IMG/VR virus record: IMGVR_UViG_3300033388_007730
Span: 62,001-126,000 of that record
Length of the DNA: 64,000 nucleotides
Direction: 5' to 3' (one strand)
The notes under the pieces were generated by a model. That model did no database searches. It had not been told where the DNA came from and saw nothing but the letters and a program-made list of their open reading frames with translations. A program made the translations under genes and the position numbers. Below are positions 36,530 to 64,000 of this stretch, piece by piece. Within the stretch, counting starts at the first letter, position 1, and the number at the start of each line of letters is the position of its first letter.

Positions 36530-38449
36530 ATGGTTACTATTGTGCATGTGATAGATAACGCTAGCATGGGAGGAGCGCAAACCATGATGTGTGAGTTATA
36601 CCTTGCTTTTCAAAGATATTATCCAGAATATGATCAGTCAGTATTAACATTAGCCAATCGTCCAACTGACAAACAACTAATTTCTTCTTATGGTGTCGAA
36701 TATCGAGAAATAAAACAATCCAACACTCTTATCGATAAAATAGCAATTTTCAAAAAGCCAGTGGTAATATTTCATAAATTAGCTTCTTCTAGACTTGATA
36801 TAGTACAGGGTCTTAAAAATAAAAGCATACCAGTAATTGTGTTAAATCATACTCTGTATAATTCCAGGAATTGGGCAAAAGCTGATGGAAGTTGTTGCAA
36901 TGCTATGGTCGCTGTTAGTAATCATATGGAAAAATGTGTTAGGAATTGGTTTCCTAGGATAAAAAGATATACTTATATTCATAATGGTGTAAATCAATTT
37001 AGGTACGAAGACATTAAGGGACAGAAAAGGGAAAAAGATACATTAGTTACTGGACGTATTAACCGAATTTGCGGCTGGAAACATTCTGAGCATTGGATTA
37101 ATTGGGTTAAAGATGTTAATTTGCCTATGAAGATGATTCATGATTATATGGGGGCAGGACTTAATCATCGTCCTGGAGCTAGAGGAAGAGAGAGAGTTAT
37201 TAATGGTAAAAAAAACATAGTAAGAATGATTGGAAATATTAGTGATTTTGATACAAAAGTGTCTATTATAAAAGGATGGGATTTATTTTTGTATGAGACT
37301 AATAGAGAAGAAGGGATAAGTATGGCTATTCTTGAAGCTCTTGCGTGTGGTGTCCCTGTTATTTGTAGTAATCATTTTGGCAACAAAGAGGTTATTGAAC
37401 AGGGTGTGAATGGATATATTTTTAGAGACAGAACAGAAGCAAAAAAGATATTAACCAGGTTGTGTAAGAATCCTGGAGGATTAGCTAAATTGAAAGAATC
37501 AACTAAAGATCATTTCTTAAGAAAATTAGATGCTAGGCATACCGCTAGCAGGTATATAAAAATAATAGATCAAATGTCTTTATCATCATTGAATAATAAT
37601 GTTTCTGAGTTATCTGTTGATACCAATGAAAAGGAAAAAAAAGAAGTGGTTGTTTTAAAGAATAGAGAAATTTCTAAAAAATTCACTATACTTAGTTCTT
37701 GTTTTAATAAAGGGAAATACTTTAATGATTGGGCTAATTCTATTTTAGAGCAAAAGTATAGACCTCTTGAGGTGGTAGTGGCTAATGATGCTTCTACTGA
37801 TAATAGTATGAAACTGTTGGAAGGGTTTGCTGATAAATTTAAATCTGAGGGAATAGAATATAGGTTAATAAATAATTTTGATAGATTGCATTGTGGATCA
37901 TCTTATAGAAATTTAGTTCAATATGTTACTGGTTCTTATGTTGGGGTACTTGACTCTGATGATATGTTGACTAATGATGCTGTGAAATATGTGATGGGAG
38001 TATATGATAGGAATCAAGATATAGATTGGATATATACCCAATTCGAGATATGTGATATGAATATGAAGACTAAGAGAAGGGGATTCTGTAATTATCCTAA
38101 GAATGGTGAATCATTGTTAGAGATGGGTGATAAGAGAATTCATGGATACGGTCATTGGAGAACATTTAGTCATAAAATAAAAAAACCTGCGAAATTATTC
38201 GGTAGGAGTTTAATATGTTCAGTTGATAAGCATATGGGATATAGATTAGAAGAGATGGGACCAGGATTATTTGTTGATAGAGTTTGTTATAGGTATAGGC
38301 AGCATCCAGTGGGATCGCCAGAATCTGTATCTTCTACTAAAAAAGCTATTGAAGTTTGGGCTAAAGTTAGGAAAGATGCTCATAAAAGAAGACATAAAAG
38401 TAAAAAGAAGGGCAACATATCATATTATTCAATTACTAAAGGAAAATAA
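36530..38449 (+). CDS. bifunctional glycosyltransferase, GT4 plus GT2
   Basis: MGGAQ, IHNGV, EGISMAILEALACGVPVI; second half ANDASTD, LDSDD. Confidence 0.85.
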   Translation: MVTIVHVIDNASMGGAQTMMCELYLAFQRYYPEYDQSVLTLANRPTDKQLISSYGVEYREIKQSNTLIDKIAIFKKPVVIFHKLASSRLDIVQGLKNKSIPVIVLNHTLYNSRNWAKADGSCCNAMVAVSNHMEKCVRNWFPRIKRYTYIHNGVNQFRYEDIKGQKREKDTLVTGRINRICGWKHSEHWINWVKDVNLPMKMIHDYMGAGLNHRPGARGRERVINGKKNIVRMIGNISDFDTKVSIIKGWDLFLYETNREEGISMAILEALACGVPVICSNHFGNKEVIEQGVNGYIFRDRTEAKKILTRLCKNPGGLAKLKESTKDHFLRKLDARHTASRYIKIIDQMSLSSLNNNVSELSVDTNEKEKKEVVVLKNREISKKFTILSSCFNKGKYFNDWANSILEQKYRPLEVVVANDASTDNSMKLLEGFADKFKSEGIEYRLINNFDRLHCGSSYRNLVQYVTGSYVGVLDSDDMLTNDAVKYVMGVYDRNQDIDWIYTQFEICDMNMKTKRRGFCNYPKNGESLLEMGDKRIHGYGHWRTFSHKIKKPAKLFGRSLICSVDKHMGYRLEEMGPGLFVDRVCYRYRQHPVGSPESVSSTKKAIEVWAKVRKDAHKRRHKSKKKGNISYYSITKGK

Positions 38450-39129
38450 TGAAAAATATTAATGATATTTTTTTCTTTGTTCAAGCTAGAATGGGATCTA
38501 CCAGAGTTCCTGGTAAGATGTTAAGACCATTTGCTGGAACTACTCTTATGGATATTATAGTTGAAAAGATTTTAAAATCAAAAGTAATTCCAAAAGATAA
38601 TTTCTATTTATCAGTATATGAATCTGAGTTGAAAGAGATCGGAAAGAAGTATGGAGTTAATGTTTTTGATAGGAGTTATAAATCTGCTTATGCCGAAGGA
38701 GTATTGACAGATATATATGAGTGGCACGATAAAGTTGATTATAAATATGCTATAAAAATAAATGGTTGCTCTCCATTTTTATCGATAGAGACTATAGATA
38801 GGTTTGTTAAAAAATATGTTGAAATGGATGGAGATGGTCTATTTGGTGTTATAAAGAAGAATAATTATTTTTGGAACAAAAATCATAAATTAGTAACACC
38901 ATGGCCAGAGGGATATCAATTTATGAATACCAAGATGGTAGAAGAAACATTTGAAGCAGCACATTGCTTATACGGTGGTAGAACAGATATTATTAAGGAT
39001 GGCATATGGATGGGAGATTTTCAAAAGGCAGGTAGTATAGAACTTTTTGAGATGAGTGAAGAAGAAGTTCTTGATATAGATGAAGAATGGCAATTTAAGC
39101 TTTATGAAATTTTGTACAAGGGGATTTAA
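38449..39129 (+). CDS. second nonulosonate cytidylyltransferase (NeuA/PseF/SpsF-like)
   Basis: QARMGSTRVPGKMLRPF, CSPFL, LDIDEEWQF. Confidence 0.82.
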   Translation: MKNINDIFFFVQARMGSTRVPGKMLRPFAGTTLMDIIVEKILKSKVIPKDNFYLSVYESELKEIGKKYGVNVFDRSYKSAYAEGVLTDIYEWHDKVDYKYAIKINGCSPFLSIETIDRFVKKYVEMDGDGLFGVIKKNNYFWNKNHKLVTPWPEGYQFMNTKMVEETFEAAHCLYGGRTDIIKDGIWMGDFQKAGSIELFEMSEEEVLDIDEEWQFKLYEILYKGI

Positions 39130-39131
39130 TT

Positions 39132-40598
39132 ATGTTTTACATATTTGAAATGGCTAATAATCATATGGGGAGTGTTTTTCATGGAAAATTAATAATTGAT
39201 AGATTTTCTGAAATAGCGAGAAGATATGACATAGATGCTGGAATGAAATTTCAGTTCAGACAACTTGACACATTTATTCATAGAGATTTCATAGATTCTG
39301 ATTTAAAATATGTTAAAAGATTTAAAGAAACAGAGTTATCTAAAGACCAATTTAGAGAATTGATTGATTATTCTAAAGAAAAGGGATTAAAAACTGTTGC
39401 CACTCCATTTGACAATGAATCTATTTCTTGGTTAGAAGATTTGGATGTGGAGATAGTTAAGATAGCAAGTTGCTCTGTTGATGATTGGCTATTATTGAAA
39501 GATGTATGTGAGATAAATAAAAAAATTATAATATCTACTGGAGGAGCAGAAATGGATACGCTTCATAAGGTTTATAATATTTTTAAGAGTAGAGATAGAG
39601 ATTTTGCTTTTATGCATTGTGTTGGAGAATATCCCACTAAGTACAAACACGCTAATCTAAACAGGATTAATATATTGAGACAAGAATTTCCTGATATTCA
39701 AATAGGATTTTCTACTCATGAGGTGAATGGATGGGGCAAATTATCATTAGTTCCATATGCTATTGCTATGGGATGTTCTATAGTGGAGAAACATGTCGGA
39801 GTTGTATATAATGATATTAAGTTGAATGATTATTCTTGCTCTCCTAGAGATATGGAAACAATTTTACATAAGGTAAAGGCATATAATAATTGTTGCAACA
39901 CACCATCTGATACAGAAAAAGATACTCTTAATAAATTGAAGAGAGGAATATATGCAAAACGAGATTTGAAGTTTGGAGAGGTAATTAGTAAGAATGATAT
40001 TTATCTAGCTATGCCAGTAGCTGACGGTCAAATGGATGGATCTATGTTGCATGACTGTATTGGCAAATATTTGTTAAATGATGTTAATAAAGATTTTGAA
40101 ATAAGAATAGAAGATTGTGATTTTGATTCTAATAATGATATTATTTCGAAGATTAAAATGAAAGCTTTAGATATATTAGATCAAGCCAACATATCAGTAT
40201 CTAGAGATGATGATATAGAGATATCTTGTCACTATGGCATAGATAATTTTTTTAAAGCTGGCGTTTTGATAATGTCGAGAATAAATAGAGAATATTGTAA
40301 AAAAATATTAATTGTTTTTGATGGTCAAAATCATCCTACTCATAAGCATTTTAAAAAAGAAGAATCGTTTGAGTTGTTATATGGAGATTGTAAATTGATA
40401 GTTTCTGGTATATGTCATCAGATGGTAAAGGGAGAGTCAATTTTGATACCTAGAAATGCAGAACATTCTTTTTCTAGTGAAGATGGTTGTGTGATAGAGG
40501 AAGTATCGACAACGCATTATGTTGGTGATTCTATTTATAATGACTTTAATATAAACAAATTAGACATTTCAGAAAGAAAAATAAATATTAATTTTTAG
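39132..40598 (+). CDS. NeuB-family synthase with SAF domain fused to a C-terminal cupin
   Basis: IFEMANNHMG, KFQFR, KIASCS, MHCVGEYPT, GFSTHE, VEKHV; cupin HPTHKHFKKEESF...HSF..EEVST. Confidence 0.85.
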   Translation: MFYIFEMANNHMGSVFHGKLIIDRFSEIARRYDIDAGMKFQFRQLDTFIHRDFIDSDLKYVKRFKETELSKDQFRELIDYSKEKGLKTVATPFDNESISWLEDLDVEIVKIASCSVDDWLLLKDVCEINKKIIISTGGAEMDTLHKVYNIFKSRDRDFAFMHCVGEYPTKYKHANLNRINILRQEFPDIQIGFSTHEVNGWGKLSLVPYAIAMGCSIVEKHVGVVYNDIKLNDYSCSPRDMETILHKVKAYNNCCNTPSDTEKDTLNKLKRGIYAKRDLKFGEVISKNDIYLAMPVADGQMDGSMLHDCIGKYLLNDVNKDFEIRIEDCDFDSNNDIISKIKMKALDILDQANISVSRDDDIEISCHYGIDNFFKAGVLIMSRINREYCKKILIVFDGQNHPTHKHFKKEESFELLYGDCKLIVSGICHQMVKGESILIPRNAEHSFSSEDGCVIEEVSTTHYVGDSIYNDFNINKLDISERKININF

Positions 40599-40605
40599 GT
40601 AAAAG

Positions 40606-41493
40606 ATGGCTCATAAAATTTCATATCAACCAGGCAGTGTTCCTTTGAACAGAGTATGTTATGATTACAGAGACGACATAGCTTTTAGAATTTATGTTAT
40701 GATGAGTAATGATTGGGATTCTATGAAAAAGTGGAAAAGGTTGAAGCATAGTAGAAAATCAGAAAGACATGGAAGTTACAAGCCTAAATATCTCCAAGAT
40801 TTGCTTCAATTAGTTAAAGACACTCCTGTAGGGGATACTAAATTTGCTTGGAAAAAAGTTCCTAAAAAAGGTAAAATTTTAGATAGGGTTCATTTTGCAT
40901 TTGATAAAAAAACTGATATATATTATCCCGCTGGTGGAGGTAGTAGAGTAGCTATTGCATATTTTTTATGTCATTCTCATGTGCCAGCTTTATTGGTTTC
41001 GACTAAGGAAGGCTCGGCATGGGCAAAAAATTTTGGAGTAGGAACAAGGCATTTTAATGGTATGCCAGATGATATTATTAAAAAAATGTTGTTTAGAAGA
41101 GAAATTAATAATTTGTTTGTTGATGGTATATTGAAGAAAAAAATTAGCAGTGAGTTTCTTTACAAAATTCCAGATCTAGGATTTAGGGGTAAATTTGATG
41201 TAAATAACTTATTAAATGACAAAGAGTTATTAACCCAAATAAGAGGGAAAGAAGTACTTAATACAATACAGGATAATGGTTATTTAGAGGTCAGTATTTC
41301 CGAATACTGTTCATCTGTAACGACTGTAGGCGAATCTTCTCATAGAATTAAAATATCTAATAAGATATCTAACTATTATAAGAAGAGCAATATCAAACAT
41401 ATTAAAAATGTTCTATCATATTCAGAATATGATGTTATTTTGTCTAAAGGTAAAAATGGAAAAGTGTCATTAGATAATTGTAAAAAGGTTTAG
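40606..41493 (+). CDS. hypothetical protein with ParB/Srx-like motif
   Basis: AGGGSRVAIAYFL..HVPALLV. Confidence 0.4.
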   Translation: MAHKISYQPGSVPLNRVCYDYRDDIAFRIYVMMSNDWDSMKKWKRLKHSRKSERHGSYKPKYLQDLLQLVKDTPVGDTKFAWKKVPKKGKILDRVHFAFDKKTDIYYPAGGGSRVAIAYFLCHSHVPALLVSTKEGSAWAKNFGVGTRHFNGMPDDIIKKMLFRREINNLFVDGILKKKISSEFLYKIPDLGFRGKFDVNNLLNDKELLTQIRGKEVLNTIQDNGYLEVSISEYCSSVTTVGESSHRIKISNKISNYYKKSNIKHIKNVLSYSEYDVILSKGKNGKVSLDNCKKV

Positions 41494-41494
41494 G

Positions 41495-42256
41495 ATGAAT
41501 AATAAATTTACAATTTTAACAGCATCATCTAATAAGTATTTATATTTAAAAGACTGGATGGATTCTATTATTGCTCAAAAATATAGACCTTTAGAAGTTG
41601 TTATGGTGGATGATTGCTCTAGTGATGAAACTAAAAAATTCGTAAAAAGATTGAGAAAAAGATTTAAAGAAAATGATATAGAGTTTAAGTATTTGAGAAA
41701 TAATAATAGATTGCATTGTAGTAGCTCTTATAAAGTTGCTATAAAAAATGCGACAGGTGATTTTATGGGGGTATTAGATGCAGATGATATTTTAGTTAAT
41801 GATGCAGTAGAATATATTATGAGCAAATATAATGATCACGAAGATATAGCTTGGATATATACTCAGTTCGCAATTTATAATGTCAATATGAGGTATATAA
41901 AAGATGGGTGGTGCAGGATGCCAACAAAATGGGGATCTATGCTGGCTTCTGGAGAAAGAAGAAAAAGTATTTATTCTCATTGGAGGACTTTCTCGAAAAG
42001 ATGTAATGATTTAAATAATGTATTGCCTGAAGGACTCAAGTGTGCTGTTGATAAATACATGGGGTATAAATTAGAAGAACTTGGTAAAGGAATGTTTATT
42101 AACAGAGTATGTTACAAGTATAGGCAGGGTGTAAAGAGGGGCATAGTTTCAAAAGAAAGTACAAAAGCAACATGGAAGAAATTAGTTCAAGAGCTAGTTA
42201 TAGAGAGAAAAAAGAATGGTATAAAACCATATCCTATTATAGAAGGAGAAGCATGA
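41495..42256 (+). CDS. GT2 glycosyltransferase, paralog of the C-half of 36530
   Basis: QKYRPLEVV, VDDCSSD, LDADD, WIYTQF, HWRTFS. Confidence 0.85.
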   Translation: MNNKFTILTASSNKYLYLKDWMDSIIAQKYRPLEVVMVDDCSSDETKKFVKRLRKRFKENDIEFKYLRNNNRLHCSSSYKVAIKNATGDFMGVLDADDILVNDAVEYIMSKYNDHEDIAWIYTQFAIYNVNMRYIKDGWCRMPTKWGSMLASGERRKSIYSHWRTFSKRCNDLNNVLPEGLKCAVDKYMGYKLEELGKGMFINRVCYKYRQGVKRGIVSKESTKATWKKLVQELVIERKKNGIKPYPIIEGEA

Positions 42257-42933
42257 TGGAAAGAACAAAAAAACAATGGCATAGATATTTTGTTGAAGAA
42301 ATTTCTAATATAGTTGCTAGTCATGTTGATAAGGATAAAGATGTTTTTGTTGAATGTGGAGTTAAGCAGGGATCTTCTTCTGTTAGAATGGGAGTAAGGC
42401 TTGGTATAAGTGGATATTTATTTGATACTTGGCATGGTTTTCCGAATTTCTCTGATTTAGATGTTCATCATGATAAAGATAGGAAACGAATGGAGATGAG
42501 AATAAGAAACTCTAATAGTACTTATAGAGATTGTGTCAATGCTTTAAAGAAGCATGGATTATTTGAAATTTGTAGCATGGTTGAGGGTGATATTCTAAAA
42601 ACAGTCCCATCATTTATGGAGGATATTACAAATGATTTGTCTATTGCTATGATGCATATAGATACTGATTTGTATGAGCCTGCTAAGGTTTCTTTAGAAT
42701 CATTTTGGCCGCACGTTAAAGAAGGTGGAGTAGTTTATTTTCATGATTATGGAGATAAAAAATGGAGAGGTATTAAAAAGGTTGTCGATGATTTAGTAGA
42801 TAATGATGATGATTTATTATTTCATGTTTTTGATAAAAATAAATTATTTTCAGCAGTTATCATAAAAAACAGTAGTGTAATAAGCGAATCTATACTGCAT
42901 AGCATTGCTGAATTAGATACTAGAGTTAGATGA
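42253..42933 (+). CDS. TylF/MycF-type sugar O-methyltransferase
   Basis: VECGVKQGSS, FDTWHGFP, HIDTDLYEP, FHDYG. Confidence 0.85.
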   Translation: MMERTKKQWHRYFVEEISNIVASHVDKDKDVFVECGVKQGSSSVRMGVRLGISGYLFDTWHGFPNFSDLDVHHDKDRKRMEMRIRNSNSTYRDCVNALKKHGLFEICSMVEGDILKTVPSFMEDITNDLSIAMMHIDTDLYEPAKVSLESFWPHVKEGGVVYFHDYGDKKWRGIKKVVDDLVDNDDDLLFHVFDKNKLFSAVIIKNSSVISESILHSIAELDTRVR

Positions 42934-43736
42934 ATAGAAAAAAGATAGTGAAGAAGTTAAGAGGGCAGGAAGTTTTTATTATAACTCATATTCCCAAAAC
43001 TAGTGGGAGTTCTATAGGTCACATATTAAGGGAGTAGAAGTCTAATGTTTTCTGGCCGCACTATGAGAAGACAGATGATGCTCCTAAATATATATCAGGT
43101 CATATATGTTATGGCATTCATAAGTTATGGGGGCTTGATGAGAAAAAGGTAAAATATTTGGTTATCTTAAGAGATCCAATAAGAAGATGGAAGTCAATTT
43201 TTAATTATTCTTTAATGAGATATCATGAAGGAGCTATTCGAAAAGGTGTCCCTATTGAAACGTTTTATAATGATTGCGATGGTAATTTGGAGCGATTTTT
43301 AGATCGATGTATTAAACATGGTGTTAATCAAAATGTTATGACTAAAATTGTGTCAGGAGAAGAGGACGTTAATAATATAGAAGGTTATGAAAAGCACTAT
43401 AAGAAAAAAGGAAGATTGTATTTTAGCCAGGTTTCACAGACAGCATGGGGAGATAGATATGATTCTATATCTGATGATAAAATGGATATCATGTTGAATG
43501 TGGCTAAATCTAATTTGTTAGATAAGTATTATTTTGTTGGTTTTGTGGAAGATGAAAATAATCAGCAAAAAATGTGTGATGCATTAAAGTTGAAATTTAA
43601 TGGCAAAAACCTTGTCAAAAGAAAGTCATTGCAAAGAAAAGGGATTGATTGGGAAAATAGCAATATACACGACATGTTAGTTGAGTTGAATAAATATGAT
43701 ATTAAATTATATAATTTTGCAAAAGGATCACTATGA
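42930..43736 (+). pseudogene. sulfotransferase family protein with in-frame TAG at 43035
   Basis: PAPS-binding HIPKTSGSS upstream of the stop is in frame with SGH, LRDPIRRWKS and LNKYDIKLY. Confidence 0.75.
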
Positions 43737-45401: not shown

Positions 45402-45410
45402 GATTTTATT

Positions 45411-46495: not shown

Positions 46496-46499
46496 GTTA

Positions 46500-48034: not shown

Positions 48035-48043
48035 GAGATAATT

Positions 48044-48547: not shown

Positions 48548-48548
48548 A

Positions 48549-49355: not shown

Positions 49356-49357
49356 TT

Positions 49358-56282: not shown

Positions 56283-56283
56283 A

Positions 56284-57192
56284 ATGAAGATTCTTCTTTT
56301 AATCGATAAGCCTAACTGGGCATATCATCATATAGCAAAAGGTTTGATAAAGTATAATAATAGCGGTATAGAATTTGTTTGTCAGCCAATAAAAAAACAA
56401 GATAAGTATATAAAAAAAATATATAAAAAATATGATTTATTTTATGTATTTGGGTACAAGACGTATGGGAAGATTAATTTTTTACCAAAAAATAAAACAA
56501 TGGTTGGAGTTCATTCTTGTAAAGAGTGGGATGATGATAAAACAACACCAACAAATGTGGCCACACCTCAAAAGGATACAATTAAATATCTTAATTCTTT
56601 TTTGAGAGTCGGTGTAGTTTCTCAATATATTTATGATGTGTTAAAAAAATCGGGAGTAAATAATTTATATTATACTCCTAATGGTGTTGATTCTAATTTA
56701 TTTGTTCCACAAAATAAAATTCATAAAGAGTTTACTATAGGATATGCAGGAGTAAAGTCTCATGACTGGTTGAAGGGTATAACGGAGTTTATTATTCCAG
56801 CTTCTAAAAGATCTAAGGTTCAAACTCATTTAGCGCTAAGATTAACGAAATCTCAATTAATGTATGATCAGATGCCTAATTTCTATAATATGTTAGATGC
56901 CTATGTGTGTGCATCTACATCAGAGGGATTTTCATTAAGTGTCCTTGAGGCTGCTTCATGTGGTATTCCCATTATATCCACAAGAGTATCTGGATGTAAG
57001 GAGTTGATAAGACATGGTGAAAATGGTTTTTTTGTCGATAGAAGTGTAGAAGATATTTCTAGAAAAATAGATATCATGAAAGACCTGGAATTTAGAAAAT
57101 TTATGAGTGAGAATATGAGAAAAGATATTGTAGAAAATCATTGTTGGAGTGTTAAAATTGATAAATGGATAGATTTTTTTAAAGGTAAATAA
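56284..57192 (+). CDS. GT4 glycosyltransferase, paralog of 53420
   Basis: PNGVD, EGFSLSVLEAASCGIPIISTRV. Confidence 0.85.
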   Translation: MKILLLIDKPNWAYHHIAKGLIKYNNSGIEFVCQPIKKQDKYIKKIYKKYDLFYVFGYKTYGKINFLPKNKTMVGVHSCKEWDDDKTTPTNVATPQKDTIKYLNSFLRVGVVSQYIYDVLKKSGVNNLYYTPNGVDSNLFVPQNKIHKEFTIGYAGVKSHDWLKGITEFIIPASKRSKVQTHLALRLTKSQLMYDQMPNFYNMLDAYVCASTSEGFSLSVLEAASCGIPIISTRVSGCKELIRHGENGFFVDRSVEDISRKIDIMKDLEFRKFMSENMRKDIVENHCWSVKIDKWIDFFKGK

Positions 57193-57194
57193 TT

Positions 57195-57899
57195 TTGGGA
57201 ATAACACTTAATAAATATAATTGTTGCGATTTCGGGAAAGTTGATAGTATAGGAGTTCTATGCAGAGGAAAATCTCTTGGTAGCATAGGTAAATATAAAG
57301 AGAATTTTAAAAATATTTTTCTTGTTGGACAACATTATAGATCTCTTAAATTAATAGGTGAGCATATAGATGGTAGCAACATAGTAAAAATTTGGGGCAG
57401 TACTTTTAATAAACCTAGCAATGGTTATAAGAAACAATATGCAAAATATAATATAAGAGATATGCAAACATATCTTGATCCAAATTTGAGTGATCGTAAA
57501 GCATATAAGTTTAAAAAGATTACAAAAACAAATCATGGTTTGTTAGAAGTCTTTCCAAAACCTACTGATTTTAATGAAAGAAATAAAAGGTTTATTTTAA
57601 AGAGAGATCACAGAAGAGGAGAGAGACTTCATCATCCAACAATAGGGTTATTTGCTGTGGATATGGCTTGTGCTTACAAGCCTAAGCAGGTGAATATAAT
57701 TGGACTGGATTTTTATTGTGCTTCTGATTTTGTAGAAGAAAAGAGACATATTAGTACAAAGAAGAATTTTTGTAGAGGACCTTCGATGATAGAATATTTT
57801 GTATTACTTTGTAAGGAAGAGCCAGATATTCAATTTAATTTGTATACATGCTGTAGGAAAATTAAATCTAACAGAAATTTAAATATTATAAGAGTATAG
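57195..57899 (+). CDS. sialyltransferase-like (GT29/Maf fold) protein
   Basis: IGVLCRGKSL, PTIGLFA, VNIIGLDFY. Confidence 0.5.
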   Translation: MGITLNKYNCCDFGKVDSIGVLCRGKSLGSIGKYKENFKNIFLVGQHYRSLKLIGEHIDGSNIVKIWGSTFNKPSNGYKKQYAKYNIRDMQTYLDPNLSDRKAYKFKKITKTNHGLLEVFPKPTDFNERNKRFILKRDHRRGERLHHPTIGLFAVDMACAYKPKQVNIIGLDFYCASDFVEEKRHISTKKNFCRGPSMIEYFVLLCKEEPDIQFNLYTCCRKIKSNRNLNIIRV

Positions 57900-57900
57900 C

Positions 57901-58329
57901 ATGGTTGATGGTATATATAATTATGTAGTAGATTGTTTGCATAATCTTAATATATATGATGGAGATATAGTCAATCTAAGCGATTCAAATAGGAATGATA
58001 TATTATCAGAAAGAGGTTTTGATAATATATTAAAATTTAAAAATAATAATACAAAATTATCTTTTAAAGATAGTTCTGTTGATATTATTATCTGTTTAGG
58101 GGTGTTAGAAAATTTGAATAGAAAAAAATCTGGCATTCTTGCTATGGAAATAAAAAGAGTTTGCCAGCAAGATGGTTGTATTGTAATTATTGTGCCAAAG
58201 AAAAAGGAGAAAGACAATATTCAATATTTATCTAGCGATGATATATTAGATCATTTTTTTCCTCTTGATATAGCTTTTGATGGATCCTTCAATGATAATT
58301 TAATATTGATGTTTATAAATGAAAAATAG
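57901..58329 (+). CDS. degenerate methyltransferase type 11
   Basis: LSFKDSSVDIIICLGVLE...EIKRV; SAM-binding loop degraded. Confidence 0.5.
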   Translation: MVDGIYNYVVDCLHNLNIYDGDIVNLSDSNRNDILSERGFDNILKFKNNNTKLSFKDSSVDIIICLGVLENLNRKKSGILAMEIKRVCQQDGCIVIIVPKKKEKDNIQYLSSDDILDHFFPLDIAFDGSFNDNLILMFINEK

Positions 58330-58996
58330 TATGATAGATCTTAGAGGAACGATAGAAGTTTTTATTATAACTAATGGACGTTCTACTTATAAATATTGTA
58401 AAAAGTCTGTTGATAACCAGAAGGAAGTAAAGTTTGAAACTATTGTTATTCAGGACATGGGATGGCAGGAGGCTCATGAGGAGATCCTTAATACTTGCAA
58501 ATCCAAATTCGTATTAAGAGTAGATGATGATATGTTATTGCATCCTATGGCTTTAAAATTTATGTATCAATGTGTTAAAAAACAAAAGGATAATATAGCG
58601 TTGAGAGGTTGGAGACTATGGGAGCCATGGAGTAATAAAGTTTGTAAGGGGATAAAAGTTTATAACGTTAAGATAGCTAAAAAAATAGGATTTAAATTAG
58701 ATCATCTTGGCAAAATTGATAAGCCATTTACTAAGAATGCCGAAAAAGCAGGTTATAAAATAAAATATACTAGGGATGTAGTTGCTATTCATTCATGTGG
58801 GGATTTTAGTGAGCATTTAAAATATTGGGAGATGAGGGGAGAGGCAAAAAATGGGAAATTTACTAAAAAGAAGATATGGGCAGAGGGGTTGATAAGGTCT
58901 TGCACAATGAATCTTCAAGAACAGTGTGATCTTAATAAAAAATTTATTAGAGATTATAATATAAAGAAAGGAACTGATTTTGGTAAGTTCATCTAA
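58319..58996 (+). CDS. GT-A fold glycosyltransferase-like protein
   Basis: RVDDDMLLHP (DXD motif). Confidence 0.6.
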   Translation: MKNSMIDLRGTIEVFIITNGRSTYKYCKKSVDNQKEVKFETIVIQDMGWQEAHEEILNTCKSKFVLRVDDDMLLHPMALKFMYQCVKKQKDNIALRGWRLWEPWSNKVCKGIKVYNVKIAKKIGFKLDHLGKIDKPFTKNAEKAGYKIKYTRDVVAIHSCGDFSEHLKYWEMRGEAKNGKFTKKKIWAEGLIRSCTMNLQEQCDLNKKFIRDYNIKKGTDFGKFI

Positions 58997-59888
58997 AAAA
59001 ATATTATTCACTATTTTGACCTGTAATAGATTCCACTATTTTAAAAATTGTATAGAGTCTATTATCCAGTGTGTTGATATGAATCGTATTGATATACTAA
59101 TTATGGATAATAATACGATAGAGAAAGGATTTGATGAATATGTTCACAGTTTGTGTGAGAAGTATGGCAACATTATGGTGAAGAAGTTTATAGATCGGAC
59201 AAGAGGTGAGTTGTACAGGGCTATGAATTGGGCTATCGACTACGCTAAGACGAATAGTTATGAGATTATAGACTTTATTCAGGATGATCGACAATATCTA
59301 TATAAGAAGGAAGATCATTTGGACGATATTTTTGATATATTTAACAATTATAGCAATATAGTTCAGATCAATTGCAATCTAGCTTGGCGTAGAAAAATAA
59401 AAGGTATTGGTAAAGTTAAAAATATAAGTATTAATAAAAGTAAGTACGGTATTTTATTAGACAAAAGAGCGTGTGATAATGGATTTACGAGGGTATCTAT
59501 TTATGATCAGATAGGAGAATATCCTACAGATGCTATAAGTTGGGGCATGGAAAAGAATAGATATGTTGGGAAAATTAATGGAGAGATATGGTTCGGTAGA
59601 AGATGTCAGAAAAGAGGGTATAGCAGAGCGTTAGCTTACCAAGCCAATATGGGTATGATTTTTGATTGTGCTTATGTTAGGGGAGAGGAAAGGTATGGCG
59701 ACTACTTCCCTTCTTCAGGGGAGTTTTATTTTAAAATGCTCGATAATATACATATAGATAAAATTAAAAAAAGAGCTAAGAAAAACAAATTTTCTTATAT
59801 GGAAGATTTTTGTATTCCAGATGGATGGACTCCTAAAACCTATGGCAAACATGGTGATATAAATATAAGGAAAAAGATAGATGGGTAA
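58980..59888 (+). CDS. GT2-like glycosyltransferase
   Basis: LTCNRFHYFKNCIESI, MDNN, AMNWA, IQDD. Confidence 0.7.
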   Translation: MVSSSKKILFTILTCNRFHYFKNCIESIIQCVDMNRIDILIMDNNTIEKGFDEYVHSLCEKYGNIMVKKFIDRTRGELYRAMNWAIDYAKTNSYEIIDFIQDDRQYLYKKEDHLDDIFDIFNNYSNIVQINCNLAWRRKIKGIGKVKNISINKSKYGILLDKRACDNGFTRVSIYDQIGEYPTDAISWGMEKNRYVGKINGEIWFGRRCQKRGYSRALAYQANMGMIFDCAYVRGEERYGDYFPSSGEFYFKMLDNIHIDKIKKRAKKNKFSYMEDFCIPDGWTPKTYGKHGDINIRKKIDG

Positions 59889-60702: not shown

Positions 60703-60703
60703 T

Positions 60704-61342
60704 ATGGATATTAATGAGATTCAAGAAGGTATTAAAAATAAGCACTGGTATTACTATTATAATTTTGATGGTGTAGAAGTTAATAAAAAGAAGAAGAAAG
60801 ATAAAACGCTAGGTATGTATAATTGGGATAGAATCAGACCAGTCATAAAAGAAATTTTTGCTAAGGTTGAGAATCCTCATGTGTTGAATGTAGGATGTAA
60901 TATGGGACTGTATGATCATGAGATGACGAAGATGGGAGCAAAAGTTACGGCTATTGATATTAATACTGATAATATCGAGTTTTATAGAAGATTTGTAGTT
61001 GAAAATAAACAGGAGGATTGGTGTGTCGATGTTAGAAAAATAGATATAACTAAAGAGAGGTTGAAAGATGATTCTATCAACATTATTTTAATGTGTTGTG
61101 TGATATATCATTTAGATCTTTATCAAAATATGGTTATTAAAAATTTAATAGAAGATTGTCCTAATCATAAATTCTTAATTTTACAGGGTAATTTACCAAG
61201 AGTAACAAAAAAGAATCAGACAGAAGCTGGAGTTAATGGTATGAGAAATATTTTGAAGAATAATTCTTATTCTGTTCCAGAAGATTATATTTATGAGTGG
61301 GAAGGATATCAAAAGCCTGTAGTTATAGGAGAAAGAAAATGA
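60704..61342 (+). CDS. class I SAM methyltransferase
   Basis: VLNVGCNMG, VTAID, VIYHL. Confidence 0.75.
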   Translation: MDINEIQEGIKNKHWYYYYNFDGVEVNKKKKKDKTLGMYNWDRIRPVIKEIFAKVENPHVLNVGCNMGLYDHEMTKMGAKVTAIDINTDNIEFYRRFVVENKQEDWCVDVRKIDITKERLKDDSINIILMCCVIYHLDLYQNMVIKNLIEDCPNHKFLILQGNLPRVTKKNQTEAGVNGMRNILKNNSYSVPEDYIYEWEGYQKPVVIGERK

Positions 61343-61938
61343 AAAACAAGAAAAAGAAGTATGGGAAGTGGACTCCAGGACATGAATTAAAATATTGGAA
61401 TAAAAATGGGATACGTGTAGGAACAGATATCTATGATAGATATGCTAAAGCTTTTAAAATGGATCAATATAATTTTGAGGGAAAATTAGTTGCAGATATT
61501 GGATGTGGTCCATTTGGGGGAGTATTTTATAATGATATGAAAGAAAATATATTTCCCATAGATATCTTGGCAGATGATTATAATAAGATGGGTAATTGTG
61601 ATAAAAAAATCATTATGGGAGATCTCTACAGGGGTTTATCGTTTGAAGATAATTATTTTGATTATGTGATATGTACTAATGCTATAGATCATATCCCAGA
61701 TGTCCAATCAGGTTTTAATGAAATTTTCAGAATTCTTAAGTGTGGAGGTATTTCATTTATACATGTCCATTTAAGAAGAGAAGATCAATTAAGTAAAGCT
61801 CATATTCACTCTTTGAGATTAGAGACTGTGAAAAAGATGTGTGAGGAGTTTGAAAGCATATCTATCGTAGAAGATATCGATTGGGTTAATAACATACCAG
61901 ATAGACAGACAGCTTATTTAACTTTGAGAAAGAATTAA
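61339..61938 (+). CDS. methyltransferase type 11
   Basis: ADIGCGP, FDYVICTNAIDH, EIFRILKCGG. Confidence 0.82.
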   Translation: MKNKKKKYGKWTPGHELKYWNKNGIRVGTDIYDRYAKAFKMDQYNFEGKLVADIGCGPFGGVFYNDMKENIFPIDILADDYNKMGNCDKKIIMGDLYRGLSFEDNYFDYVICTNAIDHIPDVQSGFNEIFRILKCGGISFIHVHLRREDQLSKAHIHSLRLETVKKMCEEFESISIVEDIDWVNNIPDRQTAYLTLRKN

Positions 61939-61943
61939 TTTTT

Positions 61944-62498
61944 ATGTTAAAAATAGACATGTATCTTAAAAGATATGGTTTGAAAATTGAAGAAATTAAA
62001 AAAGTAGATTTAACAAAAGTCTATTACCAATATAGACCTGGTGTCGATTATGATAGAATTCTTACTAACTCTCCTCACTTTGAATTAGCTCAACATTACT
62101 ATAATAAGGGATTGAAATGGTTGAATGCAAATTTTAAAAATACAAAATATTTTATATTTCAAAAAGATATACTAAAAATCACTCCCTACGTTCCTGTGAA
62201 GAAAATGAGGTTGTTTGACTCTTTAAAAAAGGGTTATTTAGGGAAGGGATATGAGAATGACCGTATAGTTATTTTAAATGATCCATTTATTTGTACTAGA
62301 TATGCATTAAATTTGTCACTGCCTTCTCCAGAGGTTTTTATGGGGCATCATAGAGCAGGAGCGATGTTGGCTTTAGGGCAAAAAAATGTAGAAGTTATTG
62401 TGGCTGTTGACGATATGATAGGAACTAAGAATTGTTATGGTAGACTCCATGATATTTATAGTTTGGAGAAGGTTCAAAAAATGAGGTATAACTTATGA
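61944..62498 (+). CDS. ParB/Srx-like protein
   Basis: LFDSLKKGY...EVFMGHHRAGAMLALG..VEV. Confidence 0.55.
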   Translation: MLKIDMYLKRYGLKIEEIKKVDLTKVYYQYRPGVDYDRILTNSPHFELAQHYYNKGLKWLNANFKNTKYFIFQKDILKITPYVPVKKMRLFDSLKKGYLGKGYENDRIVILNDPFICTRYALNLSLPSPEVFMGHHRAGAMLALGQKNVEVIVAVDDMIGTKNCYGRLHDIYSLEKVQKMRYNL

Positions 62499-64000
62499 GT
62501 ATTTTGATTACAGGTATAACTGGTTTTGTGGGAAGTCATTTAGCAGATTATCTTTTGGAAGAAACAGATGATATCATTCATGGGTTAACAAGGTGGAGAT
62601 CTCCAAAAGAAAATGTTTTACATCTTATAGATGATAGCTCAATTCGTTTTGAATATGGTGATTTAACAGATTTTTCATCTTTGTATAATATTATTAATCT
62701 TAATCGTCCAAGAGTTATATTTCATTTAGCTGCTCAATCTTATGTTCCATATAGTTTTGATGTACCTGCTGCTACTCTTGATTCTAATGTAATAGGAACT
62801 TGTAATCTACTGGAGGCTGTTAAACTTTTGAAAGACGATAAAGGATATGATCCTATTGTTCATATTTGTTCTTCATCAGAAGTTTACGGACAGGTTTCAG
62901 AAGACAATGTTCCAATCACAGAAGATTGTCCTTTTGCTCCAGCTTCTCCATATGCTGTTTCTAAAGTTGGTGAGGATATGCTGGGGTTTCAGTATTGGAC
63001 ATCTTGGGGTGTAAAAACTATTAGGACTAGAATGTTTACTCATAGTGTAAGTAAATGGACTCCTGTTATTTTAAAAGATACATTAAGTGAATTGATAGAT
63101 ATAAAATATATTTCAGAAATAAGAAAAAAAGGGAAAGAAGGGGGATATTTTTCGGGAAAAATGTTAGAAGATAATACTCAAATATGGGATATGAATAGAT
63201 CTAATTTAGAAGTGTGGAATGATGAAAAATGGACAAAAATAAAACATATATCTTGTCACTCTATTAATAATTGTAAAATGTTAGAAATAATTAGTAGAGG
63301 TGGGGTTATCTGTGCTACAGATAATCATTCTATAATTGATGAAAAATCAAAAGAAATTTTAGCTTCAGATTTAAAATGTGGAGATAAGATAAAGATAACT
63401 TCTTTGCCAAATATTGAGATTACTGATATTTCAGAAGATTTAGCTTGGTTATATGGATTTTTTGTAGCTGAAGGGACAGTAACTGGAGGAAGATTAAAAA
63501 TTTCTAACAAGAATATTGATTTGTTAGAAAAATCAAAAGTTATTTTTTTAAAATATTTGGCAATTGATGGAACTATAGACCAGTATAAAGACATTTATAC
63601 TTTAAGATTAAGAAAGCCATTTTGTATAGCAAAAAGATTTTATGAAGATTGTTATGCAACTGACAAAAATAAAAAAATACCAAAAATTATTTTAAACGCT
63701 AATAAAAAATCAAAAATTTCTTTTTTACGGGGGTATAATTGTGGAGATGGAAACTTAAAAAATAATGTAAAAAGTGATTTTTATAGATTTAAAACAAAAT
63801 CTCCTATTTTAGCTATGGGATTATGTTATTTTATAGAAAGTGTTTTAAATGTAAAGTATAAAATTAATGTTGAACATAGAGATGATAAAAGATATTTTGA
63901 AATAAGATGTTTGTCTCAAAAAAATACAAAAAATGGGGAGTGGTTAAAAAAAGATAACAATGTTATTTTAAAAATAATGAAAATGGAATATGAAGATGAA
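62495..64000 (+). CDS. GDP-mannose 4,6-dehydratase/Rmd-type extended SDR with an intein; runs off window (absent from ORF track)
   Basis: hand translation MSILITGITGFVGSHLADYL, GDLTD, FHLAAQSYV, SSSEVYG, SPYAVSK, RMFTH; frame open to 64000. Confidence 0.88.
   Translation, partial: MSILITGITGFVGSHLADYLLEETDDIIHGLTRWRSPKENVLHLIDDSSIRFEYGDLTDFSSLYNIINLNRPRVIFHLAAQSYVPYSFDVPAATLDSNVIGTCNLLEAVKLLKDDKGYDPIVHICSSSEVYGQVSEDNVPITEDCPFAPASPYAVSKVGEDMLGFQYWTSWGVKTIRTRMFTHSVSKWTPVILKDTLSELIDIKYISEIRKKGKEGGYFSGKMLEDNTQIWDMNRSNLEVWNDEKWTKIKHISCHSINNCKMLEIISRGGVICATDNHSIIDEKSKEILASDLKCGDKIKITSLPNIEITDISEDLAWLYGFFVAEGTVTGGRLKISNKNIDLLEKSKVIFLKYLAIDGTIDQYKDIYTLRLRKPFCIAKRFYEDCYATDKNKKIPKIILNANKKSKISFLRGYNCGDGNLKNNVKSDFYRFKTKSPILAMGLCYFIESVLNVKYKINVEHRDDKRYFEIRCLSQKNTKNGEWLKKDNNVILKIMKMEYEDE
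63044..64000 (+). mobile_element. LAGLIDADG intein, truncated by window end
   Basis: starts Ser SVSKWTPVILK; block B ATDNHSII; LYGFFVAEG and FLRGYNCGDG. Confidence 0.82.

What the first reader, a model, noticed from the sequence alone, without database searches (positions are those of the whole stretch)
36530..64000. Glycan synthesis and decoration island of more than 27 kb in a phage-like genome, with no export or polymerase genes
About 35 tightly coupled genes include over a dozen glycosyltransferase domains, about seven methyltransferases, a sulfotransferase, cupins, a kinase-like protein and nucleotide-sugar enzymes. I see no multi-pass membrane protein (no Wzx, Wzy, ABC transporter or initiating phosphoglycosyl transferase), unlike bacterial O-antigen or capsule loci. 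Internal paralog pairs (36530/41495, 43733/50607, 53420/56284) indicate expansion in place. Inference: a cytoplasmic pathway that glycosylates virion proteins, as in giant viruses and some actinophages, or DNA.
Basis: partly seen in the sequence, partly recalled or inferred. Interest (0 to 1): 0.75.

Follow-up and report, generated by a model that had tools for sequence, protein, structure and literature searches.

The report
Megaphage glycan-building island, probably coating virions
A half-megabase-class phage devotes about 40 kb to roughly 50 soluble enzymes that make rare sugars and attach them to something. It encodes no way to export a polysaccharide, so the most likely target is its own particle proteins, as in giant viruses. 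That target has not been shown.

Summary
The window is part of a 219-kb IMG/VR virus contig, collinear with a complete 548-kb relative (G001).

**Extent**
- 52 co-oriented, tightly packed ORFs run from 36,512 to about 75,655, which is 11.7 kb past the window end.
- A satellite nonulosonic-acid module lies at 23.6–32.7 kb.

**Content**
- At least 13 GT2/GT4 domains.
- Four short MptE-like (WaaZ/Maf-type) transferases and one sialyltransferase-like lead.
- About 8 methyltransferases.
- One sulfotransferase, broken by a TAG codon.
- Two NeuB plus CMP-synthetase pathways.
- A 6-deoxyhexose branch and an APS kinase.

**What is absent**
- Neither this contig nor G001 has a Wzx, a Wzy-sized membrane protein or a Bac_transf initiating transferase.
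- No ThyA-family hydroxymethylase was found, which argues against DNA glycosylation.

**Origin:** the island sits at the same place in G001. Its genes are better conserved than the backbone (58% against 50% identity), so it is not a misjoin.

**Best reading (about 0.5):** cytoplasmic O-glycosylation of virion proteins.
- The lineage has poly-serine virion proteins.
- G001 has a TibC-like protein serine glycosyltransferase beside them.
- Glycosyltransferases are interspersed with giant FN3-rich ORFs.

**Main rival (about 0.28):** LOS-type remodelling of the host envelope.

The parts
23632..24345 (+). MptE-like (ulosonic-acid transferase-like) protein, satellite module
   Evidence: Pfam PF01973, E 1.3e-6, below the cut-off. 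Paralog of 74834.
25149..25556 (+). Stand-alone cupin, mannose-6-P-isomerase type
   Evidence: Cupin_2 E 4.9e-10; MannoseP_isomer E 2e-5.
25890..26606 (+). MptE-like protein
   Evidence: PF01973 E 8e-6, sub-threshold. Paralog of 23632.
27879..28652 (+). CMP-ulosonic-acid synthetase-like cytidylyltransferase (second copy)
   Evidence: CTP_transf_3 E 4.4e-12. PseF model E 6e-18, far below its cut-off.
31178..32020 (-). NeuB-family nonulosonic acid synthase (second copy)
   Evidence: NeuB E 1.8e-56.
32036..32650 (+). HAD phosphatase of KdsC / KDN-9-P phosphatase type
   Evidence: TIGR01670 E 9e-24; NF058599 E 3.7e-21. Both are below their cut-offs.
36512..38449 (+). GT4 + GT2 fusion glycosyltransferase; first gene of the main island
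   Evidence: Glycos_transf_1 E 1.3e-15 and Glycos_transf_2 E 4e-15. G001 ortholog 48% identical.
38449..39129 (+). CMP-ulosonic-acid synthetase-like cytidylyltransferase
   Evidence: CTP_transf_3 E 4.7e-16.
39132..40598 (+). NeuB-SAF-cupin fusion (nonulosonic acid synthase with a sugar-isomerase-like domain)
   Evidence: NeuB E 5e-44; Lyx_isomer and Cupin_2 at the C-terminus. Full-length relatives on 23 viral contigs. More than 5,000 metagenomic homologs.
40606..41493 (+). Conserved protein of unknown function
   Evidence: No Pfam hit. G001 ortholog 48% identical.
41495..42256 (+). GT2 glycosyltransferase; paralog of the C-terminal half of 36512
   Evidence: PF00535 E 6.7e-22. 42% identity to 36512 residues 387-645.
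42172..42933 (+). TylF-like sugar O-methyltransferase
   Evidence: Methyltransf_24 E 3.8e-11; TylF E 5e-9.
42930..43736 (+). Sulfotransferase gene interrupted by an in-frame TAG at 43035
   Evidence: PAPS-binding 5' and 3' motifs are present and the frame carries a stop. The G001 ortholog is intact at 248 aa. There is no general stop-codon recoding.
43733..44677 (+). GT1/GT4 glycosyltransferase
   Evidence: PF00534 E 5e-9. Paralog of 50595.
44670..45401 (+). GT2 glycosyltransferase
   Evidence: PF00535 E 3e-30.
45411..45761 (+). Cupin
   Evidence: Cupin_2 E 1.7e-5.
45754..46495 (+). One gene split over three frames (two frameshifts)
   Evidence: Three ORFs match a single 257-aa G001 protein. 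The gene is intact (244 aa) in a third relative.
46500..47036 (+). Methyltransferase interrupted by an in-frame TAA at 46827
   Evidence: Methyltransf_11 E 1.8e-8. The stop aligns with Q of the intact 179-aa G001 ortholog.
47036..48034 (+). Conserved unknown; possible GT-B glycosyltransferase
   Evidence: No Pfam or PDB hit. The G001 ortholog has a sub-threshold GT1 match, E 0.0055.
48044..48547 (+). Small protein with a class-I SAM-binding motif
   Evidence: Sequence motif only. No Pfam hit.
49322..49969 (+). Methyltransferase
   Evidence: Methyltransf_25 E 5.7e-8.
50595..51512 (+). GT1/GT4 glycosyltransferase
   Evidence: PF00534 E 1.2e-8.
51991..52635 (+). GT2 glycosyltransferase
   Evidence: PF00535 E 1.1e-9.
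52683..53423 (+). Short MptE-like transferase (WaaZ/Maf-type fold)
   Evidence: PF01973 E 2.7e-7, sub-threshold. Atlas structural neighbours are WaaZ_KDO_III and Maf; the family is mostly viral.
53411..54292 (+). GT1/GT4 glycosyltransferase
   Evidence: Glyco_trans_1_4 E 8e-17. Paralog of 56269.
54779..56282 (+). Two GT2 glycosyltransferases (54779-55528 and 55521-56282)
   Evidence: PF00535 E 1e-8 and 2.6e-8.
56269..57192 (+). GT1/GT4 glycosyltransferase
   Evidence: PF00534 E 2.2e-21.
57195..57899 (+). Sialyltransferase-like protein (lead only)
   Evidence: Atlas feature search: viral clusters carrying GT29, score 0.92 with 187 shared features; CST-I at 0.86. No Pfam hit.
57901..58329 (+). 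Methyltransferase
   Evidence: Methyltransf_11 E 1.3e-5.
58319..59888 (+). Two GT2-like proteins (58319-58996, sub-threshold; 58980-59888)
   Evidence: PF00535 E 0.004 and 8e-6.
60704..61938 (+). Two methyltransferases (60704-61342 and 61297-61938)
   Evidence: Methyltransf_11 E 3e-8 and 3e-11.
62495..64000 (+). NDP-hexose 4,6-dehydratase carrying an intein with a LAGLIDADG endonuclease; the gene runs to 64,504, past the window end
   Evidence: GDP_Man_Dehyd E 4.7e-72 in two stretches, plus Intein_splicing and LAGLIDADG_3. The G001 ortholog is 326 aa and has no intein.

Best explanation
The region is the core of a vertically inherited glycan-biosynthesis island in a megaphage lineage of about 0.5 Mb.

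**What the soluble enzymes make (activated rare sugars)**
- Two CMP-nonulosonic acids.
- A modified 6-deoxyhexose, built by a 4,6-dehydratase, a 3,5-epimerase, reductases, a TPP-dependent E1 pair and a B12-radical-SAM enzyme.
- PAPS, from an APS kinase fusion.

**What attaches and decorates them**
- About 20 glycosyltransferase-like proteins assemble the glycans.
- About 8 methyltransferases and a sulfotransferase then modify them.

**Proposed mechanism (inferred):** the phage encodes no membrane-embedded initiation, flipping, polymerisation or export step. I therefore propose that the sugars are added one by one in the cytoplasm to phage proteins before assembly. The most likely acceptors are the poly-serine stalks of virion fibre or decoration proteins.

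**Shown**
- The gene content.
- The absence of transport genes.
- The shared position and conservation in the relative G001.
- The poly-Ser proteins.
- The TibC-like enzyme in G001.

**Inferred**
- That the island's enzymes act on those proteins.
- The identities of the sugars.
For: **Gene content:**

**No export or initiation genes**
- No ORF has more than 3 TM segments in the 219-kb contig.
- G001 has only small membrane proteins. One is an ion channel, and none lies in the island.
- PF01943 (Wzx) and PF02397 (Bac_transf) are absent from both genomes, while the controls rang.

**The island is native to the lineage**
- It sits between the same backbone genes in G001.
- 43 island orthologs average 57.7% identity, against 49.7% for 122 backbone genes.
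- GC content and GC skew are uniform across it.

**Candidate acceptors**
- Poly-Ser tracts of 45-95 residues use mixed Ser codons. They occur in G000 ORFs at contig 34007-35557 and at window coordinate 99736-101403.
- In G001 they occur in two proteins that match PHROG 8510, 'virion structural protein'.
- These proteins share a C-terminal domain.

**Protein glycosyltransferase in the lineage**
- G001 ORF 539314-541635 matches TibC (PDB 4RB4) at E 1.5e-59 over nearly its whole length.
- The four iron-finger cysteines are kept, and no LPS heptosyltransferase chain matched.
- TibC glycosylates serines of TibA (PMC4358343).
- The ORF lies within 6 kb of the poly-Ser structural genes. Beside them is a paralog of window ORF 57195.

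**Glycosyltransferases among putative virion genes**
- GT1 and GT2 genes are interspersed with the giant ORFs at the start of the contig and are conserved in G001.
- A 523-aa member of that block models as an FN3-domain array, like phage tail and fibre proteins.
Against: - Nothing ties the island's enzymes to the poly-Ser proteins.
- The TibC-like gene is seen only in G001, in a region this contig does not reach. The contig itself has no GT9 match.
- The island is embedded among replication genes (DnaE, RecA, UvrD, topoisomerase, DnaX), about 70 kb from the giant ORFs and not in the structural module.
- The MptE-like proteins are short (237-273 aa). They resemble the LPS Kdo transferase WaaZ at least as much as the roughly 600-aa flagellin transferase Maf.
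- Poly-Ser linkers may simply be flexible spacers.
- Other viral contigs with TibC-like genes show no clear poly-Ser neighbours.
- Three island genes in this contig are broken.
- No capsid, terminase, sheath or baseplate Pfam model matched G001, so the structural assignments rest on PHROG hits and fold resemblance.
Confidence: 0.5

Rival explanations
1. **Host-envelope remodelling.** The phage enzymes build a new oligosaccharide either directly on lipid A-core at the inner face of the membrane or on the host's undecaprenyl-phosphate carrier. The first route is lipooligosaccharide-type and is flipped by the host's MsbA. The second is exported by host Wzx/Wzy or ABC machinery. Either would change the cell surface during a long infection, for example to block superinfection or to stop progeny re-adsorbing.
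For: - LOS-type assembly needs no Wzx, Wzy, ABC transporter or initiating transferase. The absences therefore fit it equally well (own knowledge of Campylobacter and Neisseria LOS loci, which also carry neuB, a CMP-sialic acid synthetase and sialyltransferases).
- The short MptE-like proteins have WaaZ_KDO_III neighbours by structure.
- The island sits among early or middle-type replication genes.
- Similar but smaller sugar clusters in jumbo cyanophages have been interpreted this way (PMC7824862).
Against: - No lipid A-core-specific enzyme was found. The only GT9 domains in the lineage are of the protein-glycosylating TibC type.
- The island is more conserved than the backbone, unlike typical fast-turnover surface-antigen loci.
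- Host specificity of flippases and ligases would limit a glycan built by about 20 foreign transferases.
- The host is unknown, so even an outer membrane is unproven.
Confidence: 0.28
2. **Other soluble product.** The enzymes make a soluble or lipid-linked glycoside or secondary metabolite, or they redirect host sugar metabolism, with no macromolecular acceptor encoded by the phage.
For: TylF-like O-methyltransferase, B12-radical-SAM enzyme, TPP-dependent E1 pair, FkbM methyltransferase and deoxysugar enzymes are also typical of natural-product sugar tailoring.
Against: - No aglycone-forming genes (PKS, NRPS, terpene) were seen among the ORFs scanned.
- About 20 transferases are far more than a glycoside needs.
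- Nonulosonic acids are typical of surface glycoconjugates.
Confidence: 0.07
3. **DNA hypermodification.** The glycans are attached to phage DNA bases, as in T-even phages.
For: Phage glycosyltransferases can place varied glycans on 5-hydroxymethyl-pyrimidines (Pyle et al. 2024, cited in PMC12619734).
Against: - No ThyA-family hydroxymethylase is present in this contig or in the complete relative, and the control rang.
- No TET/JBP match was found, but that control rang nowhere, so the result is weak.
- Nonulosonic acids, sulfation and about 20 transferases have no precedent on DNA.
Confidence: 0.03
4. **Not a phage trait.** The island is a misjoined host locus, or the whole element is a cellular or plasmid genome rather than a phage.
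For: No Pfam terminase, sheath, baseplate or similar hallmark matched G001. The 219-kb contig has no tRNA.
Against: - The same island lies between the same flanking genes in an independently assembled 548-kb record rated 100% complete, and in a 386-kb ENA scaffold.
- Composition is uniform.
- Inteins with LAGLIDADG endonucleases occur both inside and outside the island.
- G001 has a 27-gene tRNA array and PHROG matches to virion structural and tail-fibre families.
Confidence: 0.03

Closest known systems
Giant-virus glycosylation gene clusters (Mimivirus fibril glycans, chlorovirus capsid glycans, the 38-kb sugar region of Cafeteria roenbergensis virus) - from own knowledge
   Same: - Virus-encoded nucleotide-sugar pathways for rare, bacterial-type sugars, plus many soluble glycosyltransferases.
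- Tens of kilobases in size.
- No export machinery.
- The products decorate particle proteins.
   Different: - Here the virus is a tailed-phage-like element of bacteria.
- The sugars include two nonulosonic-acid routes and probably sulfate.
- The target is not known.
Mycobacteriophage virion glycosylation (Freeman et al. 2023, cited in PMC12619734)
   Same: Phage-encoded cytoplasmic glycosyltransferases that O-glycosylate capsid and tail proteins.
   Different: - Those systems use a handful of transferases and host-supplied sugars.
- This island has about 52 genes, including complete sugar-synthesis branches.
Sugar / 'LPS' clusters of jumbo cyanophages such as P-SSM2 (PMC7824862)
   Same: - Epimerase/dehydratase paralogs, cupins, nucleotidyltransferases and several glycosyltransferase families in one phage cluster.
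- No experimental target.
   Different: - Those clusters have about 15 genes, against about 52 here (about 75 in G001).
- They lack NeuB, CMP-synthetase, MptE-like and sulfation genes.
- They were proposed to alter host surface polysaccharide.
Bacterial autotransporter heptosyltransferases TibC/AAH (PMC4358343)
   Same: The G001 ORF matches TibC at E 1.5e-59 and keeps the iron-finger cysteines. TibC is a cytoplasmic enzyme that glycosylates serines of a surface protein before export.
   Different: - The ORF is fused to a GT2 domain.
- It sits beside poly-Ser virion proteins rather than an autotransporter.
- It is not present in the contig under study.
Campylobacter lipooligosaccharide and flagellin glycosylation loci (own knowledge)
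   Same: - NeuB, a CMP-synthetase and MptE/sialyltransferase-type transferases together with methyltransferases.
- All cytoplasmic, with no Wzx or Wzy.
   Different: - There are no full-length Maf proteins, no flagellin and no heptosyltransferases of LPS type.
- The cluster is carried by a virus.

Membership tests
Wzx/Wzy- or ABC-dependent O-antigen / capsule locus | Wzx flippase (Polysacc_synt family, about 10-14 TM) | tested here: not met
   PF01943 is absent from G000 and G001, and the control rang in 13 of 14 genomes. No ORF has more than 3 TM segments in G000 or more than 6 in G001.
Wzx/Wzy- or ABC-dependent O-antigen / capsule locus | Wzy polymerase or ABC-2 permease (multi-pass membrane proteins) | tested here: not met
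   Hydropathy scan of all ORFs. Of the four small G001 membrane proteins scanned by Pfam, one is an ion channel and the rest have no match. One of the four overlaps a repeat region that matches a tail-fibre PHROG.
Wzx/Wzy- or ABC-dependent O-antigen / capsule locus | Initiating phosphoglycosyl transferase (Bac_transf or WecA type) | tested here: not met
   PF02397 is absent from G000. No WecA-sized membrane protein exists. PF00953 itself was not searched.
Maf-type flagellin glycosylation island | Full-length Maf (about 600 aa; MptE-like core plus flagellin-binding domains) | tested here: not met
   The four MptE-like proteins are 237-273 aa and score below the Pfam cut-off. Maf appears only as a partial structural neighbour.
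Maf-type flagellin glycosylation island | Nonulosonic acid synthase plus CMP-activating enzyme | tested here: met
   NeuB at 39132 and 31178; CTP_transf_3 at 38449 and 27879. All score below the NCBIfam equivalog cut-offs, so the sugar is not identified.
BAHT (TibC/AAH) protein O-heptosylation | TibC-like catalytic domain with four iron-finger cysteines | tested here: inconclusive
   Met in relative G001 (E 1.5e-59, cysteines aligned). Absent from the 219-kb contig, which does not cover that region.
BAHT (TibC/AAH) protein O-heptosylation | Adjacent autotransporter substrate | tested here: not met
   The neighbours are poly-Ser proteins that match a virion-structural PHROG, not autotransporters.
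T-even-type DNA glycosylation | Enzyme that makes hydroxymethyl-pyrimidine (ThyA-family hydroxymethylase, or TET/JBP) | tested here: not met
   PF00303 is absent from both genomes, and the control rang. PF12851 is absent, but its control rang nowhere, so that half is inconclusive.
Lipooligosaccharide-type core assembly | Lipid A-core-specific transferases (WaaA, or WaaC/WaaF heptosyltransferases) | tested here: inconclusive
   The GT9 matches in G001 are TibC-like, not WaaC/WaaF-like. WaaA (PF04413) was not searched. WaaZ-like structural neighbours exist for the MptE-like proteins.
Virus-encoded virion glycosylation (giant viruses, mycobacteriophages) | Glycans present on particle proteins | not testable with these tools
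   This needs purified particles and mass spectrometry.
Virus-encoded virion glycosylation (giant viruses, mycobacteriophages) | Viral genome encodes soluble glycosyltransferases and sugar-nucleotide enzymes without export genes | tested here: met

The most novel reading that the evidence does not exclude
A lineage of roughly 0.5-Mb phages builds a mucin-like coat on its own particles. Long poly-serine stalks of fibre or decoration proteins would be O-glycosylated in the cytoplasm. A phage TibC-like enzyme would start the process, and a self-encoded pathway of 50-75 genes would extend it. The resulting glycans would carry nonulosonic acids, branched or methylated deoxyhexoses and sulfate. This would be a bacterial-virus counterpart of Mimivirus fibril glycosylation, and the most complex glycosylation system known in any phage.
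Probability: 0.35. Interest if true: 0.85.

Novelty: new variant of a known kind. Interest (0 to 1): 0.7.

Why it matters
Phage-encoded glycosylation is known only in small forms: a few transferases acting on DNA, on host O-antigen or on mycobacteriophage capsids. Large self-sufficient glycan factories have so far been a hallmark of giant eukaryotic viruses.

This island takes about 7-11% of a half-megabase phage genome and is better conserved than the backbone. It suggests that the largest phages have converged on the same strategy.

If the target is the particle, that would affect how such phages stick to surfaces, resist proteases and are recognised. If the target is the host envelope, it would be an unusually elaborate case of surface reprogramming.

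NeuB-cupin genes of this type have thousands of homologs in metagenomes, many of them marine. The phenomenon may therefore be widespread and overlooked.

Tried and rejected
**Stop-codon recoding.** One TAG in the sulfotransferase aligns with Q of its ortholog. A genome-wide comparison with G001 found only a handful of aligned stops of all three kinds, mostly at gene ends. Rejected.

**Hallmark phage genes**
- Pfam Terminase_6N, Terminase_6C, TerL_ATPase, Phage_sheath_1 and Baseplate_J gave no match in G001.
- PHROGs gave nothing for eight giant ORFs.
- PDB sequence searches of two giant ORFs gave nothing useful.
- An Atlas search of a 1082-aa ORF scored only 0.63.

**Placing the lineage**
- GenBank phages hold no relative of that giant ORF.
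- They hold only three weak NeuB matches.

**Sequencing runs:** none was listed for the island, so no read mapping or expression data were possible.

**Unknown ORFs**
- An hhalign all-against-all of island proteins timed out and was replaced by phmmer.
- ORFs 49969 and 47036 remain unassigned.
- The Maf-like protein 52683 has no PDB sequence match.

**Generality of the TibC link**
- The 386-kb relative could not be searched for a TibC-like gene because the record is not held.
- TibC-like genes on six other viral loci showed no clear poly-Ser neighbours, so the TibC/poly-Ser link does not generalise yet.

**Literature:** searches found no description of such an island.

Full report
**Where the window lies.** The window is bases 62,001-126,000 of a 219,188-bp IMG/VR virus record, which CheckV rates 44% complete.
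- GC content is about 31%, with a strong positive GC skew throughout and no break at the island.
- Nearly all genes are on the + strand.
- The standard genetic code fits.

I took the whole contig and called 283 ORFs.

**What the island contains.** Pfam and NCBIfam scans show an uninterrupted run of 52 + strand ORFs from 36,512 to about 75,655. That is 11.7 kb beyond the window end. 46 of 51 junctions overlap or are 15 nt or less apart.

The window part holds:
- A GT4-GT2 fusion (36512).
- Eleven further GT1/GT2 proteins. One of them (58319) scores below the cut-off.
- Six Pfam-supported methyltransferases.
- Two cupins.
- A CTP_transf_3 cytidylyltransferase (38449).
- A NeuB-SAF-cupin fusion (39132).
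- A short MptE-like protein (52683).
- An NDP-hexose 4,6-dehydratase split by an intein with a LAGLIDADG endonuclease (62495-64504).

Past the window end come:
- A TPP-dependent E1 alpha/beta pair and an SDR.
- Two epimerase/reductases closest to GDP-fucose synthase.
- A B12-binding radical-SAM enzyme.
- An RmlC-like 3,5-epimerase.
- An FkbM methyltransferase.
- An APS kinase fused to a small HIGH-type nucleotidyltransferase domain.
- Another MptE-like protein.

An RlaP gene and a topoisomerase mark the return to backbone.

A satellite module lies upstream at 23,632-32,650. It has two MptE-like paralogs, a cupin, a second cytidylyltransferase, a second NeuB on the minus strand, and a KdsC/KDN-9-phosphate-phosphatase-like HAD enzyme.

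All NeuB and cytidylyltransferase scores are far below the NCBIfam equivalog cut-offs. The nonulosonic acids therefore cannot be named.

An Atlas search gives a lead that ORF 57195 is sialyltransferase-like (GT29/CST-I).

**Corrections to the observation**
It has both PAPS-binding motifs but an in-frame TAG at 43,035, and its G001 ortholog is intact.
- A methyltransferase (46,500-47,036) has an in-frame TAA.
- One gene (45,754-46,495) is split by two frameshifts. Both are intact in relatives.
- There is no general recoding. These three lesions are either decay or assembly errors.
- The 'kinase-like' protein could not be confirmed.
- The three paralog pairs are real.

**No export or initiation machinery**
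- A hydropathy scan finds no protein with more than three TM segments in the whole contig.
- The Bac_transf family is absent.
- The NeuB-cupin protein led to a 547,943-bp IMG/VR record (G001) rated 100% complete, which I fetched whole.
- G001 also lacks Wzx.
- G001 has only a few small membrane proteins. One is a GluR0-type ion channel, another overlaps a repeat region, and none lies in the island.
- Twenty-two other viral loci that carry the NeuB-cupin gene have no ORF with four or more TM segments within 10 kb.

**The island belongs to the phage**
- The contig is collinear, in reverse, with G001 from 482 kb to 222 kb. 191 of 283 ORFs match, at a mean of 51% identity.
- The island corresponds to G001 312,195-371,244, which is about 59 kb and 75 ORFs. 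That region adds a third NeuB and a third cytidylyltransferase, an aldo-keto reductase and two 2-hydroxyacid dehydrogenases.
- The flanking genes are the same on both sides.
- Island orthologs average 57.7% identity (n = 43), against 49.7% for the backbone (n = 122).
- A third relative, a 386,529-bp ENA scaffold, carries the same gene order and an 88% identical NeuB-cupin.
- Each paralog has its own ortholog in G001, so the duplications are old. The 36512/41495 pair is tandem in G001.
- G001 has 29 tRNAs, 27 of them in one array.
- G001 also has PHROG matches to virion structural and tail-fibre families near its ends.
- No Pfam terminase, sheath or baseplate model matched.

**What is the acceptor?**

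*DNA is unlikely.* Neither genome has a ThyA-family hydroxymethylase. The TET/JBP search was uninformative.

*The MptE-like proteins do not decide between protein and lipid.* Their family is mostly viral. Their structural neighbours include both the LPS Kdo transferase WaaZ and the flagellin transferase Maf.

*Three observations favour phage proteins.*
1. Two ORFs of this contig carry poly-serine tracts of 45-95 residues, written with mixed codons. One (contig 34,007-35,557) lies between ORFs of 1,957 and 2,006 aa. The other is at window coordinate 99,736-101,403.
   - G001 has more of them, including two proteins that match PHROG 8510 'virion structural protein'.
   - These proteins share a short C-terminal domain.
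2. Within 6 kb of those G001 genes lies a 773-aa protein whose residues 94-456 match TibC at E 1.5e-59.
   - The four iron-finger cysteines are aligned, and no LPS heptosyltransferase chain matched.
   - TibC glycosylates serines of a surface protein (PMC4358343).
   - A paralog of island ORF 57195 and a 1,126-aa GT1/GT9/methyltransferase protein sit there too.
3. GT1 and GT2 genes are interspersed with the block of giant, Ser/Thr-enriched ORFs at the start of this contig and are conserved in G001.
   - One of them has a chlorovirus glycosyltransferase as its best PDB match, at a weak E of 7e-5.
   - A 523-aa member of the block was modelled from 39 homologs at mean pLDDT 85. It is an FN3-domain array resembling phage minor tail and fibre proteins, although TM-scores are low, as expected for flexible multi-domain chains.

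*Caveats.*
- The TibC-like gene lies in a part of G001 with no counterpart in this contig.
- The island sits among replication genes, not structural ones.
- TibC-like genes on other viral contigs lack obvious poly-Ser neighbours.
- Nothing connects the island's enzymes to these proteins.

*The rival.* Lipooligosaccharide-type assembly on lipid A-core also needs none of the missing genes. It fits the WaaZ-like fold and the position of the island. Iyer et al. read smaller cyanophage sugar clusters as host-surface modifiers (PMC7824862).

I give protein (virion) glycosylation about 0.5 and envelope remodelling about 0.28.

**Comparison and novelty.** The system works like the glycosylation clusters of giant viruses and, on a far larger scale, like mycobacteriophage virion glycosylation.
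- It is not a member of the Wzx/Wzy or ABC-dependent polysaccharide loci, of Maf-type flagellin islands or of T-even DNA glycosylation. In each case a defining feature was tested and not met.
- Literature searches found no description of a comparable phage island.
- GenBank phages hold only three weak NeuB matches.
- The NeuB-cupin fusion has more than 5,000 metagenomic homologs, many from marine samples.

I rate it a new variant of a known kind, with interest 0.7.

Noticed in passing
window 62495-64504; 16969-19962; window-coordinate 84942-87647 and 119196-121568 (outside the window): Four genes carry inteins or LAGLIDADG insertions: the sugar 4,6-dehydratase, UvrD helicase, DnaX clamp loader and a papain-like protease. 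Their G001 orthologs are much shorter (326, 631, 371 and 286 aa). The insertions therefore differ between the two genomes.
   Followed up: partly
window 42930-47036: Three neighbouring island genes are broken. The lesions are a TAG at 43035 (sulfotransferase), two frameshifts in 45754-46495, and a TAA at 46827 (methyltransferase). All three genes are intact in relatives. I could not tell decay from assembly error because no reads were available.
   Followed up: partly
window 4666-9152: DNA polymerase III alpha is split into a PHP/N-terminal gene (4666-6066) and a finger/HhH gene (7752-9152), with a 349-aa ORF between them. In G001 the second part is one 660-aa gene that also matches the intervening ORF.
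   Followed up: no
contig 34007-35557 and window-coordinate 99736-101403 (outside the window): Poly-serine tracts of about 45 and 95 residues, written with mixed AGT/TCT/AGC/TCA codons. The second protein has a Cys-rich head and a short C-terminal domain shared with G001 proteins that match a virion-structural PHROG.
   Followed up: yes
contig 139-44758 (upstream of the window): A block of giant ORFs (978 to 2,006 aa) with no PHROG or PDB sequence match. Ser+Thr content is 16-19%, against a genome median of 10%. G001 additionally has a 5,139-aa ORF at 486,468-501,887.
   Followed up: partly
window 22709-23020 and 29716-30228: DUF4326 and NADAR domain proteins sit between the sugar genes of the satellite module. 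Both families are linked to ADP-ribose processing.
   Followed up: no
window 33954-34595 and 34730-35554: A peptide deformylase and a radical-SAM/4Fe-4S protein lie directly upstream of the island.
   Followed up: no
window-coordinate 75900-76367 (outside the window): A 155-aa protein with an extremely lysine-rich, repetitive N-terminal half lies at the island's downstream edge. It is conserved in G001.
   Followed up: no
window-coordinate 94922-97588, 103395-104861 and 143248-144987 (outside the window): The contig also encodes a CCA-adding/poly(A)-polymerase-HD protein, a PAS histidine kinase and a Ro60/TROVE-vWA protein.
   Followed up: no
G001 171.7-183.6 kb; G001 249552-250637: The complete relative has a 27-gene tRNA array and a GluR0-type ligand-gated ion channel. 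The 219-kb contig has no tRNA at all.
   Followed up: no
L071 (GCA_002721255.1 contig PBJY01000003.1, 86 kb): A contig binned as a Flavobacteriaceae MAG carries three NeuB genes, a DegT aminotransferase, a formyltransferase and the NeuB-cupin fusion. These are followed by many small ORFs and an ORF of more than 2,660 aa, all on one strand. It looks like a phage contig rather than a bacterial one.
   Followed up: no
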